A DNA stretch of 13,862 nt from Octopus sinensis (GCF_006345805.1 NW_021826024.1:1-13862); one strand, 5' to 3'. Positions 1-12,881 are shown, counted from the stretch's first letter. Notes: generated by a model from the sequence alone, not told the origin. Made by a program: numbers and translations.

Positions 1-270
1 TACACACACAACAACCACACACGCACGCACGCACACCACACACACATACACACACACACACGCACGCACACACACACACACACATACACACACATACACA
101 CACATACACACACATACACACACATACACGCACGCACACACACACAATCACATACATACACACACGCACGCTCACACACACACACACAATCATATACCTT
201 CACACACGCACGCACACACACACATACAGACACACATACACACACACACACACATACATACGCTCACACG
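1..270. repeat. Compound (CA)n/(CACATA)n microsatellite
   Basis: Directly visible CA, CACG and CATA runs. Confidence 0.97.
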
Positions 271-3347: not shown

Positions 3348-3415
3348 TACATATATACATACATATGTAAAGATACACACACACACATATATATACGTAT
3401 ATATATATATATACG

Positions 3416-3449
<34 letters not shown>

Positions 3450-3543
3450 AATGAGGGTGAAAAATTGATATTAATTTAATAATACCATTAATTTAACACC
3501 AAGTGTATTTTCTCCCTTGAATTTAAATTTGTATAAATTTATA

Positions 3544-3602
<59 letters not shown>

Positions 3603-3715
3603 CATACATACATACATACATACATACATACATACATAATACATACATACATCAGTATACACATACACACACGCTCACATACGTACTATTGTATGCATGT
3701 ATGTATGTATATATA

Positions 3716-3762
<47 letters not shown>

Positions 3763-3785: not shown

Positions 3786-4042
3786 ATATTAGGAGAACGT
3801 TACGGTAATCTATGAGTGTAATGATACTTATACACATAAGAAGGGATACAATATTGACTTAACAAAGCAAGAGGAGTGAGTTTCAGTGGCGTTATGCATT
3901 TGTATACGGACAGTAATGGATAATATGGAGTTCACAACATCTAGATTCAAGAGAATGACAGAGAGCGTCGCTAAATCTGTAAGCACACACCTAGGCGTGA
4001 GTATATATAGCGATACAAACAGTGTATGAATTCAATATTTAC

Positions 4043-4155: not shown

Positions 4156-4406
4156 GGCGAAGCAAGTGGTATTCATTTTACGCTGGAAATCAAAAAGAGA
4201 AGTACAAACCATGGGAGGTAACTTTGTAAGGGAAATAACTCCTATTCAGTGATTCTACATAGTGGAGGTTCAGAGAAAGACACGTTTATATCAGTACATA
4301 TACAGTCATTGCGTCATCCGCCCATTCACCCATCCATCCACCCATCCATATATTCATACTTATACACAAACACATACACACATATCCAGATGAATATATA
4401 TAATAT

Positions 4407-4640
4407 TCTTTTATTCTTTTACTTGTTTCAGACATTTGACGGCGGCGACGCTGGAGCACCGCATTTAGTCGAACAAATCCACTTCAGGACTTTCTAAGCC
4501 TAGTACTTACTTTATCGGTCTCTTTGGCTGAACCGCTAAATTATGGGGACGTAAGCACACCAACATCGGTGTCAAATGATGGTGAGGGGACAAACACAGA
4601 CAAACAAAAACTACCATGTTTATATATATATATATATATA
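4407..4640 (-). mobile_element. 3' half of the CORE-like octopus SINE, truncated at its internal (TA)n
   Basis: Alignable by eye to 10355-10600 (ttttacttgtttcag...ctggagcaccgc...ggggacgtaa...acaaacacagaca). Confidence 0.85.
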
Positions 4641-7452
4641 TCATTCACAAATTTGAATTCGGTGATACTAGTTGAGGATTCTAGCTCGCTCTGATACTGA
4701 GTTGAGTTGGTACCTCCTAGTATCTCAAAATTCAATATATAATCATTTATGATATAGTATTCCACGCTGAAGAGAAAAGAAGTTTCGGTAAGATAGAATT
4801 ATTTAATATTTAATATTTTAATTCTTATGCTTTCCTAAAACTTGATTTCGAAACGTACGTCCGTGGATAACTTTTAAAAATGTTTGATAGATTGCGGTTA
4901 ATTCATTCTCTCTTACCTGTTTGTGTCAGCCTTCCAATTGCTGTTTTTACTGAGATCTCCTTTTTAGTAGAAGAAATAGCTATAACCCTTTGACTGCTAT
5001 TTCTAAATTCGGTATGTGGTAAGGCAATTCGTTGCTGAACCCTTATTGCTTAGTATTACTTAAATTTTCCTCAAATGAGGCTTTTACATGCCGAAGACTA
5101 CTTGGTGTAATTGATAATTATTCCAAATTAATTAATTTCACCCTTCATTATTACGGATAACCATATTTTATCTCAGTAGATGACTACAGCATCTTGTTTT
5201 GGCTACACGCGGGTGGAAGGGGCTGTTGACACAATCGTTTCATTCACAAATTTGAATTCGGTGATACTAGTTGAGGATTCTAGCTCGCTCTGATACTGAG
5301 TTGAGTTGGTACCTCCTAGTATCTCAAAATTCATATATAATCATTTATGATTATAGTATTCCACGCTGAAGAGAAAAGAAGTTTCGGTAAGATAGAATTT
5401 TTAATATTTAATATTTTAATTCTTATGCTTTCCTAAAACTTGATTTCGAAACGTACGTCCGTGGATAACTTTTAAAAATGTTTGATAGATTGCGGTTAAT
5501 TCATTCTCTCTTACCTGTTTGTGTCAGCCTTCCAATTGCTGTTTTTACTGAGATCTCCCTTTTTAGTAGAAGAAATAGCTATAACCCTTTGACTGCTATT
5601 TCTAAATTCGGTATGTGGTAAGGCAATTCGTTGCTGAACCTTATTGCTTAGTATTACTTAAATTTTCCTCAAATGAGGCTTTTACATGCCGAAGACTACT
5701 TGGTGTAATTGATAATTATTCCAAATTAATTAATTTCACCCTTCATTATTACGGATAACCATATTTTATCTCAGTAGATGACTACAGCATCTTGTTTTGG
5801 CTACACGCGGGTGGGAAGGGGCTGTTGACACAATCGTTTCATTCACAAATTTGAATTCGGTGATACTAGTTGAGGATTCTAGCTCGCTCTGATACTGAGT
5901 TGAGTTGGTACCTCCTAGTATCTCAAAATTCAATATATAATCATTTATGATTATAGTATTCCACGCTGAAGAGAAAAGAAGTTTCGGTAAGATAGAATTA
6001 TTTAATATTTAATATTTTAATTCTTATGCTTTCCTAAAACTTGATTTCGAAACGTACGTCCGTGGATAACTTTTAAAAATGTTTGATAGATTGCGGTTAA
6101 TTCATTCTCTCTTACCTGTTTGTGTCAGCCTTCCAATTGCTGTTTTTACTGAGATCTCCCTTTTTAGTAGAAGAAATAGCTATAACCCTTTGACTGCTAT
6201 TTCTAAATTCGGTATGTGGTAAGGCAATTCGTTGCTGAACCCTTATTGCTTAGTATTACTTAAATTTTCCTCAAATGAGGCTTTTACATGCCGAAGACTA
6301 CTTGGTGTAATGATAATTATTCCAAATTAATTAATTTCACCCTTCATTATTACGGATAACCATATTTTATCTCAGTAGATGACTACAGCATCTTGTTTTG
6401 GCTACACGCGGGTGGGAAGGGGCTGTTGACACAATCGTTTCATTCACAAATTTGAATTCGGTGATACTAGTTGAGGATTCTAGCTCGCTCTGATACTGAG
6501 TTGAGTTGGTACCTCCTAGTATCTCAAAATTCAATATATAATCATTTATGATTATAGTATTCCACGCTGAAGAGAAAAGAAGTTTCGGTAAGATAGAATT
6601 ATTTAATATTCTTATGCTTTCCTAAAACTTGATTTCGAAACGTACGTCCGTGGATAACTTTTAAAAATGTTTGATAGATTGCGGTTAATTCATTCTCTCT
6701 TACCTGTTTGTGTCAGCCTTCCAATTGCTGTTTTTACTGAGATCTCCCTTTTTAGTAGAAGAAATAGCTATAACCCTTTGACTGCTATTTCTAAATTCGG
6801 TATGTGGTAAGGCAATTCGTTGCTGAACCCTTATTGCTTAGTATTACTTAAATTTTCCTCAAATGAGGCTTTTACATGCCGAAGACTACTTGGTGTAATT
6901 GATAATTATTCCAAATTAATTAATTTCACCCTTCATTATTACGGATAACCATATTTTATCTCAGTAGATGACTACAGCATCTTGTTTTGGCTACACGCGG
7001 GTGGGAAGGGGCTGTTGACACAATCGTTTCATTCACAATTTGAATCGGTGATACTAGTTGAGGATTCTAGCTCGCTCTGATACTGAGTTGAGTTGGTACC
7101 TCCTAGTATCTCAAAATTCAATATATAATCATTTATGATTATAGTATTCCACGCTGAAGAGAAAAGAAGTTTCGGTAAGATAGAATTATTTAATATTTAA
7201 TATTTTAATTCTTATGCTTTGCTTTCCTAAAACTTGATTTCGAAACGTACGTCCGTGGATAACTTTTAAAAATGTTTGATAGATTGCGGTTAATTCATTC
7301 TCTCTTACCTGTTTGTGTCAGCCTTCCATTGCTGTTTTTACTGAGATCTCCCTTTTTAGTAGAAGAAATAGCTATAACCCTTTGACTGCTATTTCTAAAT
7401 TCGGTATGTGGTAAGGCAATTCGTTGCTGAACCCTTATTGCTTAGTATTACT
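4641..7452. repeat. Head-to-tail tandem array of a ~600-bp unit, 4.7 copies
   Basis: Units start TCATTCACAA at 4641, 5240, 5839, 6440 and 7029 (periods 599, 599, 601, 589). The last copy is ~424 bp. Copies differ only by a few small indels, and both ends abut (TA)n. Confidence 0.98.
4767..4916 (-). other. Canonical GT-AG intron-like segment (150 nt), present in every array unit
   Basis: Minus-strand donor CAG|GTAAGA (GT = 4916-4915), branch-like CTTAC, and acceptor TTCTTTTCTCTTCAG|C (AG = 4768-4767). Confidence 0.55.
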
Positions 7453-7552
7453 TATATATATATATATAATATATATATATTATATATGTGTGTGTGTGTG
7501 TGTGTGTTGTGTATATATATATGTGTGTGTATATATATATATATATATATAA
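7453..7552. repeat. (TA)n/(TG)n microsatellite
   Basis: Directly visible. Confidence 0.95.
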
Positions 7553-7579
7553 TAAGATTAGCTCGTATACGAGTGGGTA

Positions 7580-8890
7580 TATATTTGTAAAAAATGAAGT
7601 TTGAAAATGCTGCTATATTAGACAAATTTTAATTTTTAACATGTTTCGGTTCTTGAAATGACGAACCTTATCAAAAAAAATTATATATAATAAAGGGAGT
7701 TCATGCTATATGTTTAAAGAGTATGATGTAATAGTTCATAATTGTGACATATATTCAATAGAGTCAAATATAAAAAATTCATATATAATATTCAATAGAG
7801 TCAAAATATAAAAAATTCATAGATAATAAAGGGAGTCCATGCTATATGTTTAAAGAGTATGATGTAGTAGTTAATAATTGTGACATATATTCAATAGAGT
7901 CAAATATAAAAAATTCATGTTCTTGAAAAGGCAAGGAATTCATTTTAGATTTTACCTTGTGTTCCAATGGGAGCAACAGTAATGATTTTTGGTTAGTTTA
8001 ACAGAACGAGACGTCATCAATGTTTTGACCAATCATCCTCGGTTTCTCCACACGATACAGCTATGGGTCAGACCCGATTCTGATTGGTCAAAACAATGAT
8101 GACGTCTCGTTCTGCTTGACTAGCCACCTAACAGGATGATTGGTCAAAACATTGATGACGTCTCGTTCTGCTGGACTAGTCACCTAACAGACCCGATTCT
8201 GATTGGTCAAAACATTGATGACGTCTCGTTCTGCTGGACTAGTCACCTAACAGGATACAGTCATGGGTCAGATCTAATCTCGATTCGTCAAAAAAATGAT
8301 GACGTATTTCTTCCGTGGCCAAACTGTCGCTCCGCTTGTTTGGTTTCCTAACAGGATACAGTTAGGAGTATTTTCACTATATTCGTTGAGACTGGGTTTT
8401 GATTGGTTTGGAACTATATGACGTCAGTGAAAAGTGCAAGTGACCACAGCTTAGCTGAGCTGATATAAACCCAACAATCACAAAATTCACCAAAATATTG
8501 CGAACAGACACCGACCCAAAATCATTACTGTTGCTCCCATTGGAACACAAGGTAAAATCTAAAATGAACTCCTTGCCTTTTCAAGAACATGAATTTTTTA
8601 TATTTGACTCTATTGAATGTATGTCACAATTATGAACTACTACATCATACTCTTTAAACATATAGCATGGACTCCCTTTATTATATATGAATTTTTTTAT
8701 ATTTGACTCTATTGAATATATGTCACAATTATGAACTATTACATCATACTCTTTAAACATATAGCATGAACTCCCTTTATTATATATAATTTTTTTTGAT
8801 AAGGTTCGTCATTTCAAGAACCGAAACATGTTAAAAATTAAAATTTGTCTAATATAGCAGCATTTTCAAACTTCATTTTTTACAATATAT
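7580..8890. mobile_element. Non-autonomous foldback-type DNA element with long TIRs
   Basis: The left arm 7580-7992 is the reverse complement of the right arm 8516-8890, apart from a ~37-bp extra duplication in the left arm and a few substitutions. Each arm holds two ~98-bp subrepeats. The ~520-bp interior is non-coding, and the element is flanked by TA-rich microsatellites. Confidence 0.88.
8011..8500 (+). promoter_or_regulatory. Array of CCAAT-box/CRE composite sites followed by a TATA box
   Basis: ATTGG-N12-TGACGT at 8083, 8139, 8202 and 8402 (the last with full TGACGTCA at 8419-8426), a variant ATTCG-N12-TGACGT at 8283, and an inverted copy at 8011-8033. TATAAA is at 8464-8469. Confidence 0.65.
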
Positions 8891-8892
8891 AT

Positions 8893-8940
<48 letters not shown>

Positions 8941-9024
8941 CACACCATATATATACATATATATGAGTGTGTCTGTGTATTTACATATATTTTATATATA
9001 TATATATATAATATTATATATATA

Positions 9025-9078
<54 letters not shown>

Positions 9079-9100
9079 TTATATATATATATATATATAA

Positions 9101-9140
<40 letters not shown>

Positions 9141-9145
9141 TATAA
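8886..9145. repeat. Long (TA)n microsatellite
   Basis: Directly visible. Confidence 0.96.
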
Positions 9146-9689: not shown

Positions 9690-9985
9690 CGAGGTCGCAT
9701 TACACATGCGGATGCTAGGCTTATCAGCTGGGAACTGTTACGTGGCAGGTCGATCCTCCTTCGAAAGAAGGCAGGAAACCCGCATGACCTGTCCAACTGG
9801 CGGCCTCTCACGATCTGCTCCGCGGTGTACCGCTTATACACTAAGGTGCTTGCCGCCAGGATGCTCCACACCACGCCCCTCAACCCCGCCCAGCGCGGCT
9901 TCATTAAGGCTGACGGATGCGGCGAGAATAACTTTCTCCAGGATCGAACATTTTCATGCATGCGCAGAAGGTGTGGCATCGCCTC
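9690..9985 (+). mobile_element. Fragment of an early-branching (R2/NeSL/Utopia-like) non-LTR reverse transcriptase
   Basis: The frame open from 9690, which includes ORF 9825..10037, reads GRSILLRKKAGNPHDLSNWRPLTICSAVYRLYTKVLAARMLHTTPLNPAQRGFIKADGCGENNFL. This carries the NWRPI / YRLF.K.LA.RL / QRGF...DGC.EN motifs. The segment is visibly more GC-rich than its flanks. Confidence 0.9.
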
Positions 9986-10189
9986 CCAACTAAAGAATTT
10001 TGCCCATGTGACATTAGTTTTGGCGGATACATTTTGAACGCAACTCGTATTCATAGATTCTTGTATTCCTTTGTAATATTCTGCTCGGGGCTTTCCTGGA
10101 CGGATGTTCGGTGGATGGTTCTGGTTTACCAGGAAGCAACTGTCTTTCCAGTGATTACAATTTCCAACATCCTTTACCAAATGATAATT

Positions 10190-10354: not shown

Positions 10355-10773
10355 TACTCTTTTACTCTTTTACTCTTTCACTTGTTTCAGTCATTTGACT
10401 GCGGCCATGCTGGAGCACCACCTTTAGTCGAGCAAATCGACCCCGGGACTTATTCTTTGTAAGCCCAGTACTTATTCTATCGGTCTCTTTTTGCCGAACA
10501 CTAAGTGACGGGGACGTAAACCCACAAGCATCGGTTGTCAAGCGATGGTGGGGGTACAGACACAGACACACAAACATATACACACACATACATATATATA
10601 TATATAATATACATATATACGACAGGCTTCTTTCAGTTTCCGTCTACCAAATCCACTCACAAGGCATTGGTCGGCCCGAGGCTATAGCAGAAGACACTTG
10701 CCCAAGATGCCACGGAGTGGGAAAGAACCCGGAACCATGGGGTTGGTAAGCAAGCTACTTACCACACAGCCAC
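10355..10773 (-). mobile_element. Full-length tRNA-derived, CORE-like octopus SINE
   Basis: Minus-strand head GTGGCTGTGTGGTAAG (A box), GGTTCTTTCCC (degenerate B box), CORE-like ATCTTGGGCAAGTG, an internal TA/TG microsatellite and a (AAAGAGTA)n tail. No clear target-site duplication (TSD). Confidence 0.92.
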
Positions 10774-11113: not shown

Positions 11114-11115
<2 letters not shown>

Positions 11116-11150
<35 letters not shown>

Positions 11151-11196
11151 TGATGATGATGATGATGATGATAATAATAATAATAATAATAATAAC

Positions 11197-11231
<35 letters not shown>

Positions 11232-11302
11232 TGATGATAATAATAATAATAATATAATAAAATAATAATATGATAATGATAATAATGATAATAATAATAA
11301 TG

Positions 11303-11339
<37 letters not shown>

Positions 11340-11356
11340 TAATAATAATAATAATT

Positions 11357-11402
<46 letters not shown>

Positions 11403-11405
11403 TAA
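11116..11405. repeat. (AAT)n/(GAT)n trinucleotide microsatellite
   Basis: Directly visible. It explains the poly-I and poly-L ORFs. Confidence 0.97.
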
Positions 11406-11539: not shown

Positions 11540-11658
11540 CCCCTCCCGCCGGAGACTCGTGGAGCTTTTAGGTGTTTTCGCTCAATAAGCACACACAACG
11601 CCCAGTCTGGGAATCGAAACCGCGATCCCACGAACGCGAGTCCTTACCGTAACCAGCG
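11540..11658 (-). mobile_element. 5' tRNA-like head of a third SINE family (truncated)
   Basis: The minus strand reads GGACTCGCGTTCGTGGGATCGCGGTTTCGATTCCCAGACTGGGCG, containing B box GGTTTCGATTCCC. Confidence 0.75.
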
Positions 11659-11714
11659 TATATAATATATATATATATATATATACTCTTTTACTCTTTA
11701 TATATATATCTATA

Positions 11715-11759
<45 letters not shown>

Positions 11760-11825
11760 CATTATATATTAATATATATATATATAATATATAATATAAT
11801 ATATTATATATATAATATAATATAT

Positions 11826-11864
<39 letters not shown>

Positions 11865-11872
11865 CTATATAT
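11659..11872. repeat. (TA)n microsatellite
   Basis: Directly visible. Confidence 0.95.
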
Positions 11873-12041
11873 ATAATAGTTATCGCCATACTAATATGGC
11901 ATTCTTATAAAAATAAGAAAAAAAGCTGTCCGCTTATTAGCTCCATGAGGCCATCGCCTTAAGTTAGCTATTTGATACACAAACTGTGTCCATATAACCT
12001 TCGAACAAGGAGGTCAGTCGCTCCACACTACTTGACCGGCA

Positions 12042-12083
12042 GCTACAGACGCGTTTCGGGGTATTGCCCCTTTTCAATGCAGC
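12042..12083 (-). ncRNA. Mirror copy of the minimal type I hammerhead ribozyme
   Basis: Exact reverse complement of 12164-12205. The predicted cut is 3' of position 12048 on the minus strand. Confidence 0.8.
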
Positions 12084-12163
12084 GTAGCCAGCCAGTAGGT
12101 GTCGCTTCCGACAATCTCTGTTCGAACAGAGATTGTCGGAAGCGACACCTACTGGCTGGCTAC

Positions 12164-12205
12164 GCTGCATTGAAAAGGGGCAATACCCCGAAACGCGTCT
12201 GTAGC
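12164..12205 (+). ncRNA. Minimal type I hammerhead ribozyme (U3-A8 core variant)
   Basis: Stem I GCUGCA/UGUAGC; core UUGAAAA (12170-12176); stem II GGGG-CAAUA-CCCC; GAAA (12190-12193); palindromic mini stem III ACGCGU; cleavage triplet GUC, with the cut after 12199. Confidence 0.8.
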
Positions 12206-12431
12206 TGCCGGTCAAGTAGTGTGGAGCGACTGACCTCCCTTGTTCGAAGGTTATATGGATACAGTTTGTGTATCAAATAGCTAACTTAAGGCGATGGCCT
12301 CATGGAGCTAATAAGCGGACAGCTTTTTTCTTATTTTTATAAGAATGCCATATTAGTATGGCGATAACTATTATTTTCCGGGAACGCTGCCGCTGTTCTC
12401 TTTTAGAGAGACTTAGTTATTTTAATATTTC

Positions 12432-12490
12432 TATTATATATATATATATATATATACATATATATAGATATACATATAGATATAGATATA
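12432..12490. repeat. (TA)n/(TAGATA)n microsatellite
   Basis: Directly visible. Confidence 0.9.
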
Positions 12491-12881
12491 CGAAATGTAG
12501 TCCAGTGGTGCGGAGGGTGTATGTAATCGGTTTTATTAATAGAAAACACAATATAGATCTCACTTGGAGTCCAGGAAAAATTGTTTTATAATTAGTGTTG
12601 GGGAAGAAATGATTAGACGAACAGAGTGTGAGAATTGGGTGAGAAACGTGGCAGGAACGGAACTACATTAAAATTGCGTGGAGCGTGTAAAGGAAATAGA
12701 GAGATATTGCAGCAATTGCTTGTCGGAATGTGAAATATTGCGAGCAATGTGGACGGTAACAAGCAAGCATGAAATGCTTTGATGGAAAATACGAGAAGAT
12801 CTGATTGAAACGAATCCAGCATAAAATAAACCGGGCGAGTCAATGACTGTAATTTCATGTGTTTGATTATCTGAGTGGAAA

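What the first reader, a model, noticed from the sequence alone, without database searches (positions are those of the whole stretch)
11873..12374. Compact non-coding palindromic element carrying two divergent hammerhead ribozymes
Seen: a 251+251-bp near-perfect palindrome with no spacer, set between TA microsatellites, with no credible ORF and an intact minimal hammerhead in each arm pointing outward from the centre. Known: minimal type I hammerheads with a palindromic helix III mark the pLTRs of Penelope-like elements and retrozymes, and Penelope insertions often carry inverted pLTRs. Inference: this could be a non-autonomous, strand-symmetric ribozyme retroelement. Both strands give essentially the same RNA. 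A read-through transcript would fold into a 250-bp duplex that sequesters the ribozyme (a potential ADAR or Dicer substrate), whereas RNA initiated near the centre could self-cleave. I do not know this architecture as a described family, but I cannot search to confirm.
Basis: partly seen in the sequence, partly recalled or inferred. Interest (0 to 1): 0.85.

Follow-up and report, generated by a model that had tools for sequence, protein, structure and literature searches.

The report
Head-to-head hammerhead retroelement insertion
The 502-bp perfect palindrome is real and each half carries a variant hammerhead ribozyme, but it looks like the known footprint of a Penelope-like retrotransposon inserting two truncated copies head-to-head into a TA microsatellite, not a new kind of element.

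Summary
The palindrome is confirmed: arms 11873-12123 and 12124-12374, no spacer, three differences. Each arm carries an outward-facing type I hammerhead (+ 12164-12205, - 12083-12042). It has a 6-bp helix I, a 4-bp helix II and a palindromic ACGCGU helix III. The core is UUGAAAA, a U3-A8 covariant of CUGAUGA, so it is not the canonical intact motif. Rfam does not detect it, but my descriptor hit only these two sites in the window and 0 of 4000 random arms.

A canonical C3-G8 twin of the motif lies in a metagenome contig that encodes a Penelope-like (PLE) reverse transcriptase.

The same window holds a second, unrelated inverted-pair element (7553-8887). It also has outward U3-A8 hammerheads, (TA)n flanks and an extension on one side only.

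Published PLE biology describes these same features: 5' truncation, an adjacent inverted 5'-truncated copy, a one-sided "tail", (TA)n targeting, cleavage and priming on both strands, U3-A8 cores, and paired hammerheads on opposite strands.

Best reading: a head-to-head pair of truncated copies of a non-coding, PLE-mobilised hammerhead element. This is a new member of a known kind. Copy number, the autonomous partner, read support and ribozyme activity could not be tested.

The parts
11659..11872 (.). Left (TA)n microsatellite, the presumed insertion target; it abuts the left arm directly
   Evidence: TRF 11659-11875, period 2, 113 copies; sequence
11873..12123 (-). Left arm: the inverted 5'-truncated copy of the element (sense on the - strand, 3' end at 11873)
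   Evidence: 98.8% reverse-complement match to 12124-12374
12124..12374 (+). Right arm: the direct 5'-truncated copy (sense on the + strand, 3' end at 12374)
   Evidence: Arm plus tail (12124-12434) as RNA is strongly structured, z = -5.85
12164..12205 (+). Type I hammerhead variant: helix I GCUGCA/UGUAGC, core U3-U4-G5-A6-A7-A8-A9, helix II GGGG/CCCC with loop CAAUA, GAA, palindromic helix III ACGCGU, C17; predicted cleavage between 12199 and 12200
   Evidence: Coordinates and fold. Descriptor: only these hits in the window, 0 of 4000 random arms. Canonical twin in PLE contig L001. No Rfam hit
12042..12083 (-). Mirror hammerhead on the - strand; predicted cleavage between 12048 and 12047
12124..12248 (+). 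Extended helix I domain: an imperfect ~40-bp stem with a UAC internal loop and the hammerhead core at its tip. The base of the stem coincides with the palindrome centre. Mirrored at 11999-12123 on the - strand
   Evidence: MFE -54.9 kcal/mol, z = -5.2, 0 of 200 shuffles as stable. The UAC loop and CAAUA loop 2 resemble the HH9 consensus (UUAC, CAAAAA) printed
12375..12434 (+). Unique 60-bp extension on the right side only, between the arm and the resumed TA tract; a candidate PLE 'tail' (inference)
   Evidence: Sequence. No similarity to the arms or to the rest of the window beyond chance. One-sided 30-40-bp tails are a PLE signature
12435..12495 (.). Right TA-rich tract, the presumed other half of the interrupted microsatellite
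   Evidence: Sequence
7553..7993 (-). Element 2, inverted copy: one-sided tail at about 7553-7578 (contains the palindrome CTCGTATACGAG), then arm 7579-7993
   Evidence: Arm alignment ~98.5% identical apart from one 37-nt indel; the extension is on the left only; sequence
7634..7678 (-). Element 2 hammerhead-like motif on the - strand (UUGAUAA core = U3-A8, helix II GGUUC/GAACC, palindromic helix III ACAUGU, U17)
   Evidence: Relaxed descriptor. 0 of 3000 random arms and 0 hits in 60 random windows
7994..8513 (.). Element 2 asymmetric centre, with three 63-bp tandem repeats at 8081-8256; presumably the extra 5' part of the longer copy
8514..8887 (+). Element 2 direct arm; its hammerhead-like motif is at 8792-8836 with predicted cleavage 8832/8833. 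The arm ends in (TA)n 8885-9144

Best explanation
The palindrome is one retrotransposition footprint. It consists of two 5'-truncated copies of a non-coding, hammerhead-bearing element that Penelope-like element (PLE) machinery mobilises. That element is either the pseudo-LTR/3' region of a PLE or a retrozyme-like non-autonomous derivative. The two copies are joined head-to-head inside a (TA)n microsatellite.

Inferred mechanism: a PLE RT/GIY-YIG ribonucleoprotein cuts both strands of the AT-rich target. Each 3'-OH primes reverse transcription at an internal site near the 3' end of the element RNA. One start site lies further 3' than the other, which leaves the 60-bp tail on one side only. Both cDNAs stop 40 nt upstream of the ribozyme's helix I, which is 76 nt upstream of the cleavage site, and are joined 5'-to-5'.

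The template RNA had not been cut by its hammerhead, because the arms continue 76 nt upstream of the cleavage site. The exact symmetry is most simply explained if one cDNA templated the other strand after their ends paired at a short palindromic site (TTCGAA). This last step is speculative.

The hammerhead is a U3-A8 covariant of the metazoan type I motif and can only form helix III as a dimer. Its role is presumably to process multimeric element transcripts. In this palindromic locus it is probably functionless, because a read-through transcript is a perfect hairpin.

Shown: the anatomy, the non-random ribozyme motif, the recurrence within the window, and the PLE link of the twin motif. Inferred: the mechanism, the identity of the tail, and ribozyme activity.
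For: 1. The anatomy matches every published PLE insertion hallmark.
- Heavy 5' truncation, an adjacent inverted 5'-truncated copy, a tail at one end only and a (TA)n target are all described in PMC8557442.
- The window shows (TA)n | arm | arm | 60-bp unique extension | TA tract.

2. A purified PLE protein cuts AT-rich DNA on both strands and extends both. It uses internal RT start sites that account for the tail, and hammerhead cleavage is not needed for insertion (PMC11167929).

3. The hammerhead motif is non-random: only 2 hits in the window, 0 of 4000 random arms, and z = -5.2 for the domain.
- Its architecture is the one given for metazoan type I hammerheads: helix I 6 bp, helix II 4 bp, helix III 1-2 bp with a 2-4-nt palindromic loop.
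- The U3-A8 core and opposite-strand hammerhead pairs ~100-700 bp apart are both reported for PLEs (PMC4209133).

4. A pattern scan found one relative, L001. It carries the canonical C3-G8 version with the same helix II stem and the same helix III. It lies 3' of an RT ORF whose homologues carry RVT_1 plus GIY-YIG, which makes it a PLE.

5. A second, sequence-unrelated element in the same window (7553-8887) repeats the design: outward U3-A8 hammerheads, (TA)n flanks and a one-sided ~26-nt extension.

6. The PLE contig L003 shows the same head-to-head topology with 3' ends outward, and it abuts a minisatellite.
Against: - No RT/GIY-YIG ORF and no homology to any autonomous PLE could be shown for either element. 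The window's only RT fragment (9690-10034) looks LINE-like by motif reading (weak RVT_1 only).
- No other copies were found: 0 in the window, and no ORF homologues or records. Family status and the element's true 5' and 3' ends are therefore unknown.
- The 60-bp extension is longer than the published 30-40 bp and may simply be host sequence between two microsatellites.
- In the fetched PLE contigs L002 and L003, the hammerhead sits just upstream of the ORF. No second copy of that motif turned up near their 3' ends, although that regex demanded a canonical core. A hammerhead near the 3' end, as seen here, requires a tandem/pLTR-type template as in the anole PLE, which is not demonstrated.
- Rfam reports no hammerhead.
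- Published descriptions do not specifically mention spacer-less, identically truncated arms.
Confidence: 0.62

Rival explanations
1. A one-off DNA-level inverted duplication. A single solo copy of a hammerhead element was already present in the (TA)n tract. It was later duplicated in inverted orientation by fold-back replication, template switching or hairpin-capped break repair. The palindrome would then say nothing about how the element inserts.
For: The arms are truncated at exactly the same base with no spacer, and the inner 115+115 nt are perfect. This is typical of fold-back duplication. AT-rich microsatellites are fragile (general knowledge). No other copy was available to show that palindromic insertion recurs for this family.
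Against: A second, unrelated hammerhead element 3.4 kb away in the same window has the same outward-facing inverted topology, (TA)n flanks and one-sided extension. Two independent fold-back accidents, each centred on a hammerhead element, are less likely than a shared insertion mode. Inverted 5'-truncated copies are a documented product of PLE insertion.
Confidence: 0.14
2. One reading: a dedicated, strand-symmetric, non-autonomous ribozyme element whose transposing unit is the palindrome itself, with a fixed TTC|GAA centre and fixed outer ends.
For: Near-perfect symmetry, a ribozyme in both polarities, and the centre falling exactly at the base of the hammerhead's extended helix I. The element is non-coding.
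Against: A palindromic RNA folds into a ~249-bp perfect duplex. By general knowledge, that is a poor RT template and a likely target of dsRNA processing. The analogous element 2 is not symmetric, having a 520-bp centre. Each transcript has only one sense ribozyme, so unit-length excision is impossible. The known PLE insertion mode already explains the structure.
Confidence: 0.07
3. An assembly or sequencing artefact, such as a fold-back chimeric read or a mis-joined inverted copy.
For: Long spacer-less palindromes are unstable in vivo (general knowledge). PLE structures are known to cause problems in whole-genome shotgun assemblies. Two of the three arm differences are homopolymer indels, a typical long-read error.
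Against: The palindrome is internal and short. Its two flanks differ: (TA)n on the left, 60 bp of unique sequence on the right. Chimeric fold-back reads mirror everything up to a read or contig end. The arms also differ by a substitution. A second, imperfect inverted element of the same type lies in the window.
Confidence: 0.06
4. A DNA transposon of the MITE or foldback type with very long terminal inverted repeats, which happens to contain a hammerhead-like sequence.
For: It is a short, non-coding palindromic element in TA-rich DNA, so a TA target-site duplication would be invisible. Palindromic MITEs are known (general knowledge).
Against: The ends are asymmetric, with a one-sided extension in both elements. 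The ribozyme motif is highly non-random and lies in a structured RNA domain oriented 5'->3' outward in both arms. The twin motif sits in a PLE. I recognised no transposase-related sequence or typical TIR termini.
Confidence: 0.05

Closest known systems
Penelope-like element (PLE) insertions with an adjacent inverted 5'-truncated copy (Evgen'ev & Arkhipova 2005; Arkhipova 2006; Craig et al. 2021, PMC8557442)
   Same: Head-to-head inverted copies with 3' ends outward. Heavy 5' truncation. An extension on one side only. Insertion into a (TA)n microsatellite. A hammerhead in the repeated non-coding region. The same topology is seen directly in PLE contig L003.
   Different: Neither copy has an RT/GIY-YIG ORF. 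Both copies are truncated at the identical base, giving a spacer-less palindrome. The extension is 60 bp rather than 30-40 bp. No homology to a coding PLE has been demonstrated.
U3-A8 hammerhead variant of Cercyon PLEs in Schistosoma mansoni, and paired hammerheads on opposite strands (Cervera & de la Pena 2014, PMC4209133)
   Same: The compensated U3-A8 core. A palindromic, dimer-dependent helix III. Pairs of motifs ~100-700 bp apart on opposite strands; here the cleavage sites are 152 bp apart. Most copies are solo or truncated.
   Different: The hammerhead here has the canonical metazoan dimensions: 6-bp helix I extended to ~40 bp, a 4-bp helix II and no bulge between positions 9 and 10.1. 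It lacks the min-HHR form with a long helix II. The host is different and unidentified, and there is no sequence homology outside the core.
Metazoan non-LTR retrozymes (Cervera & de la Pena 2020, PMC7229834; Li et al. 2026 preprint, 10.64898/2026.07.22.740005)
   Same: A small (~250-310 nt), AT-biased, non-coding, highly structured unit with a type I hammerhead that has a palindromic helix III. Retrozymes are proposed to be non-autonomous derivatives of PLE pLTRs.
   Different: Retrozymes are defined by direct tandem repeats that yield circular RNA after double cleavage. Here the two units are inverted, so each transcript has one sense ribozyme and cannot release a monomer.
Hammerhead HH9 / Schistosoma-type type I hammerheads (Rfam RF02275, RF00163)
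   Same: Type I topology. A 6-bp helix I followed by an internal loop (UAC here, UUAC in the HH9 consensus). A 4-bp helix II with a CAA-rich loop (CAAUA versus CAAAAA). See the consensus printed.
   Different: The core is U3-A8. Helix III is 2 bp with a 2-nt loop instead of a stable hairpin. It does not reach E<=10 against any Rfam hammerhead model. The canonical twin in L001 scores only 23.9 bits against a gathering score of 52.

Membership tests
Hammerhead ribozyme, type I | Conserved catalytic core C3-U4-G5-A6-N7-G8-A9 ... G12-A13-A14 ... H17 | tested here: inconclusive
   The core is UUGAAAA...GAA...C17, with all positions canonical except C3->U and G8->A. These two bases pair with each other. 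A natural U3-A8 covariation is reported in PLE hammerheads, and compensated C3/G8 double mutants keep partial activity. No activity data exist for this sequence.
Hammerhead ribozyme, type I | Three helices around the core, with helix I open | tested here: met
   Helix I has 6 bp and extends to an imperfect ~40-bp stem. Helix II has 4 bp. Helix III (ACGCGU) can form only between two molecules; the predicted dimer is -31.9 kcal/mol.
Hammerhead ribozyme, type I | Match to a curated covariance model (Rfam CL00010) | tested here: not met
   No hammerhead hit at gathering score or at E<=10. This is weak evidence against, because the canonical-core twin in L001 reaches only 23.9 bits against a gathering score of 52.
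Hammerhead ribozyme, type I | Site-specific self-cleavage | not testable with these tools
   This needs in vitro transcription of monomer and dimer constructs, or mapping of RNA ends.
Penelope-like element insertion | ORF encoding a PLE-type RT with a GIY-YIG endonuclease, or demonstrable homology to such an element | tested here: not met
   No such ORF lies in or next to either element. The arm ORFs have no homologues. The elements are therefore at most non-autonomous or truncated derivatives.
Penelope-like element insertion | 5' truncation with an adjacent inverted 5'-truncated copy (3' ends outward) | tested here: met
   Element 1. Element 2. Comparator PLE L003. Definition.
Penelope-like element insertion | Hammerhead motif in the repeated non-coding (pLTR) region | tested here: met
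   The twin motif lies in the PLE contig L001. The PLE contigs L002 and L003 carry min-HHRs.
Penelope-like element insertion | Extension ('tail') of 30-40 bp at one end only | tested here: inconclusive
   One-sided unique extensions are present: 60 bp at 12375-12434 and ~26 nt at 7553-7578. Without other copies I cannot show that they belong to the elements.
Penelope-like element insertion | Insertion bias for microsatellites, (TA)n in several clades | tested here: met
   Both elements lie inside TA-rich microsatellites. Definition. The window has several TA tracts, so chance adjacency is not negligible.
Metazoan non-LTR retrozyme | Direct tandem repeats (two or more units of ~170-400 bp), each with a hammerhead, giving circular RNA | tested here: not met
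   The units are inverted, not tandem. There is only one sense hammerhead per strand.
MITE / foldback DNA transposon | Symmetric terminal inverted repeats flanked by a fixed-length target-site duplication | tested here: inconclusive
   The inverted repeats span the whole element, but the ends are asymmetric because of the one-sided extension. A TSD cannot be read inside a (TA)n tract.

The most novel reading that the evidence does not exclude
The palindrome is not an insertion by-product. It is the unit of a strand-symmetric, non-autonomous ribozyme element family with a fixed TTC|GAA centre and fixed ends, both of whose strands encode the same hammerhead RNA.

A milder version is that spacer-less palindromes like this are natural footprints of symmetric, two-strand target-primed reverse transcription by a dimeric PLE ribonucleoprotein. 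In that case the two identical cDNA ends would anneal at a short palindromic site at the base of the ribozyme's helix I.
Probability: 0.08. Interest if true: 0.65.

Novelty: new member of a known kind. Interest (0 to 1): 0.3.

Why it matters
It gives two compact natural examples, 3.4 kb apart, of the inverted, tailed, microsatellite-targeted insertion structure of hammerhead-bearing PLE-type elements. Both use the rare compensated U3-A8 catalytic core.

These footprints can be read against the recent in vitro finding that a PLE protein cuts and primes on both DNA strands. The spacer-less junction in element 1 constrains how the two cDNAs are joined.

The locus is a potential source of long hairpin RNA. 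It is also the kind of structure that confuses assemblers and repeat annotators. It does not reveal a new class of element.

Tried and rejected
- **Rfam.** I ran it at gathering score and at E<=10 on the region and on the whole window. There were no hammerhead hits. The sub-threshold miRNA and SymR hits only reflect the perfect hairpin, so I rejected them.
- **Other copies.** An exact-product lookup and a homology search with the 102-aa palindrome ORF found nothing.
- **Pattern scans.** Scans for the ribozyme or arm found nothing in bacterial/archaeal genome contigs or viral contigs.
- **Literature.** A full-text search for the ribozyme sequence returned nothing.
- **Host identification.** A search with the window's RT fragment found nothing. 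ARAGORN found no tRNA.
- **Tail as next unit.** I tested whether the 60-bp tail is the start of a following tandem or circular unit. It has no similarity to the arms beyond chance.
- **Relatedness of the two elements.** They share no similarity beyond chance.
- **Snap-back priming.** Priming at the hairpin domain would duplicate only 12249-12374, not the whole arm, so I rejected it.
- **PDB.** A sequence search with the L001 RT was uninformative.
- **PNAS 2004 Penelope EN/RT paper.** It is not held in the library.
- **PLE contigs L004-L013.** No hammerhead was found with my descriptors; Rfam at E<=0.1 was run only on L002-L005 and L009 and found none.

Full report
**Observation**

Arms 11873-12123 and 12124-12374 are reverse complements with no spacer, and the centre is TTC|GAA. 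The inner 115+115 nt are perfect. Over the full 251 nt there are one substitution and two single-base homopolymer indels. No further copy of the arm exists in the window.

On the left, a (TA)n array (11659-11875) runs straight into the arm. On the right, 60 bp of unique sequence (12375-12434) separates the arm from a resumed TA-rich tract at 12435-12495. The statement "set between TA microsatellites" is therefore only half exact, and the asymmetry turns out to be informative.

The only ORFs are mirror-image artefacts of 102 and 83 aa. They have no Pfam domain, no homologue and no exact record. A full-length transcript of either strand would fold into a ~249-bp perfect hairpin of -486.8 kcal/mol.

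**The ribozyme**

No Rfam hammerhead model reports the region, either at gathering score or at E<=10. The sub-threshold miRNA and SymR hits only reflect the long hairpin.

Read by hand, the + strand at 12164-12205 is GCUGCA|UUGAAAA|GGGG-CAAUA-CCCC|GAA|ACGCGU|C^UGUAGC. This has type I topology: a 6-bp helix I, a 4-bp helix II, G12-A13-A14, a 6-nt palindromic helix III and C17.

It is not the canonical "intact" core, because position 3 is U and position 8 is A. These two positions pair with each other. Cervera & de la Pena 2014 describe this same U3-A8 covariation in Cercyon PLE hammerheads of Schistosoma mansoni, with about 1,300 hits (PMC4209133). Compensated C3/G8 double mutants keep partial activity (PMC11167929). 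That paper also gives [quoted passage not shown] as the standard metazoan type I architecture, active only as a dimer. This is what is seen here.

I tested chance with my own descriptor. It required:
- helix I of at least 5 bp;
- an NUGANNA core with a C-G or U-A 3-8 pair;
- helix II of at least 4 bp;
- GAA;
- a palindromic A...U helix III;
- H17.

It hits only these two sites in both strands of the window, and none of 4000 Markov-1 random arms.

The motif caps an imperfect ~40-bp extension of helix I (12124-12248; z = -5.2). The internal loop UAC and the loop 2 sequence CAAUA resemble the HH9 consensus (UUAC, CAAAAA) printed. The base of this stem is exactly the palindrome centre.

The hammerhead is therefore real as a sequence family member. 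Its activity is unproven. PLE hammerheads cleave poorly in vitro, or only with the element's protein present.

**Relatives**

A degenerate 30-nt pattern of the core, helix II and helix III found nothing in bacterial/archaeal genome contigs or in viral contigs. It found one metagenome contig, L001. That contig carries ACGCAG|CUGAAGA|GGGG-CGAAA-CCCC|GAA|ACGCGU|C^CUGCGU. This is the canonical C3-G8 version with the same helix II stem and the same helix III. There is no similarity outside the ribozyme.

Rfam scores even this canonical twin at only 23.9 bits against HH9, whose gathering score is 52. Rfam's silence on the window motif therefore carries little weight.

L001's ribozyme lies about 720 bp downstream of an RT ORF (RVT_1). 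The homologues of that ORF carry RVT_1 plus GIY-YIG plus two further domains, PF26215 (HTH_animal) and PF28514 (DUF8422) (domain names). L001 is therefore a Penelope-like element.

I fetched further PLE contigs from this protein family.
- L002 and L003 carry min-HHRs just upstream of their first ORF.
- L003 shows a full-length copy with an inverted 5'-truncated copy joined head-to-head. The arms are about 3 kb and 98-100% complementary, and the ORFs are divergent.
- One outer end of L003 abuts a 10-bp minisatellite.

**A second case in the same window**

A relaxed descriptor found another outward-facing pair at 8792-8836 (+) and 7678-7634 (-). The motif is UUGAUAA (again U3-A8), helix II GGUUC/GAACC, GAA, palindromic ACAUGU and U17, with an A-U-only helix I. 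No hit occurred in 3000 random arms or in 60 random windows.

These motifs sit in the arms of a second inverted repeat, 7579-7993 and 8514-8887. The arms are about 98.5% identical apart from a 37-nt indel. They surround a 520-bp asymmetric centre that contains 63-bp tandem repeats.

This element is also bounded by TA-rich microsatellites: (TA)n/(TG)n at 7457-7552 and (TA)n at 8885-9144. It also has an extension on one side only, about 26 nt at 7553-7578, which contains the palindrome CTCGTATACGAG.

The two elements share no sequence beyond chance. The design [quoted passage not shown], with U3-A8 hammerheads pointing outward, therefore occurs twice independently within 13.9 kb. This argues against an assembly artefact and against a one-off fold-back duplication. 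It also shows that perfect symmetry is not intrinsic to the architecture.

**Comparison with what is known**

Craig et al. 2021 (PMC8557442) make five relevant points about PLE insertions:
- they are highly 5'-truncated;
- an inverted 5'-truncated copy often lies immediately adjacent, forming inverted repeats;
- a 30-40-bp tail is often present at one end only;
- (TA)n is a preferred target in some clades, which obscures target-site duplications;
- hammerheads typically lie in the pLTRs.

The in vitro study of the anole PLE (PMC11167929) adds more. The protein cuts AT-rich DNA on both strands and extends both. Reverse transcription starts at two adjacent internal sites, and the sequence between them is the tail. 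The protein is predicted to be a dimer, and ribozyme cleavage is not required for insertion.

Cervera & de la Pena 2014 noted paired hammerheads ~100-700 bp apart on opposite strands, and solo motifs that probably derive from truncated PLEs. [quoted passage not shown]

**Most likely explanation (confidence about 0.6)**

One PLE-mediated retrotransposition event into a (TA)n tract produced the palindrome. Both target strands primed cDNA synthesis on the RNA of a non-coding hammerhead element. One cDNA started further 3' than the other and left the one-sided tail. Both copies are 5'-truncated, ending 76 nt upstream of the ribozyme cleavage site, and were joined head-to-head.

Because the arms run through the cleavage site, the template RNA had not been cut. 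The identical truncation point and the absence of a spacer suggest that one cDNA served as template for the opposite strand, after the ends paired at a short palindromic site (TTCGAA). This step is my inference. It predicts that longer family members read CCTTCGAACAGAG at this point.

I rejected snap-back priming at the hairpin domain, because it would duplicate only the outer 126 nt.

**Rivals and limits**

- One-off DNA-level inverted duplication of a solo copy: about 0.14.
- Assembly artefact: about 0.06.
- MITE or foldback DNA transposon: about 0.05.

Several things could not be tested with these tools: genomic copy number, an autonomous partner, read support, expression, cleavage, and the host taxon. 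The search with the RT fragment found nothing, so the cephalopod origin is unverified.

Neither element contains or adjoins a PLE ORF. Membership in "PLE" proper is therefore not established. The claim is that these are PLE-mobilised, pLTR- or retrozyme-like derivatives. They are not retrozymes in the defined sense, because the units are inverted rather than tandem.

**Verdict**

The architecture is a known consequence of PLE biology, so this is a new member of a known kind. Interest is modest at 0.3. The value lies in two clean natural footprints that bear on two-strand priming, and in a rarely documented core variant.

Noticed in passing
window 7553-8887 (hammerhead motifs 7634-7678 on the - strand and 8792-8836 on the + strand): A second inverted-pair element with outward-facing U3-A8 hammerhead-like motifs, (TA)n flanks, a one-sided ~26-nt extension and a 520-bp asymmetric centre containing 63-bp tandem repeats. 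It is unrelated in sequence to the reported palindrome.
   Followed up: yes
window 4641-7457: A tandem array of a ~599-bp unit, about 4.7 copies at 97-98% identity. It ends at the (TA)n/(TG)n tract that borders element 2. My descriptors found no hammerhead motif in it.
   Followed up: partly
window 9690-10034 (+ frame): A decayed reverse-transcriptase fragment (…NWRPLTICSAVYRLYTKVLAARM…). It gives a weak RVT_1 match (E = 0.0018) and looks like a LINE rather than a PLE by motif reading. The homology search found no hits.
   Followed up: partly
window 4404-4638 and 10363-10606: Two direct copies of a ~240-bp dispersed repeat at 79% identity, probably a SINE-like element.
   Followed up: no
window 11600-11658: The sequence just left of the (TA)n tract (…GGGAATCGAAACCGCGATCCCACGAACGCGAG…) resembles, from my memory of tRNA sequences, a reverse-complemented tRNA T-arm/acceptor region. 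This suggests a tRNA-derived SINE head. ARAGORN calls no tRNA.
   Followed up: no
window 2-269, 3387-3760, 8885-9144, 11114-11405: A high density of simple repeats: (AC)n, (TA)n and (ATA)n, the last with ~98 copies. TA tracts are therefore common here, which weakens any argument based only on TA adjacency.
   Followed up: no
L003 943-8184: A metagenome-derived PLE locus. A full-length copy has a min-HHR at 3968-3994 upstream of its ORFs. An inverted 5'-truncated copy is joined to it head-to-head (arms ~3 kb, 1229-nt spacer). The left end abuts a (CTTTTCGGTC)n minisatellite.
   Followed up: partly
L001 1734-1776: A canonical C3-G8 hammerhead with the same helix II stem and ACGCGU helix III as the window motif. 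It lies ~720 bp downstream of a PLE RT ORF whose endonuclease part appears to be lost. Tandem repeats of ~215 bp follow at 2391-2883.
   Followed up: partly
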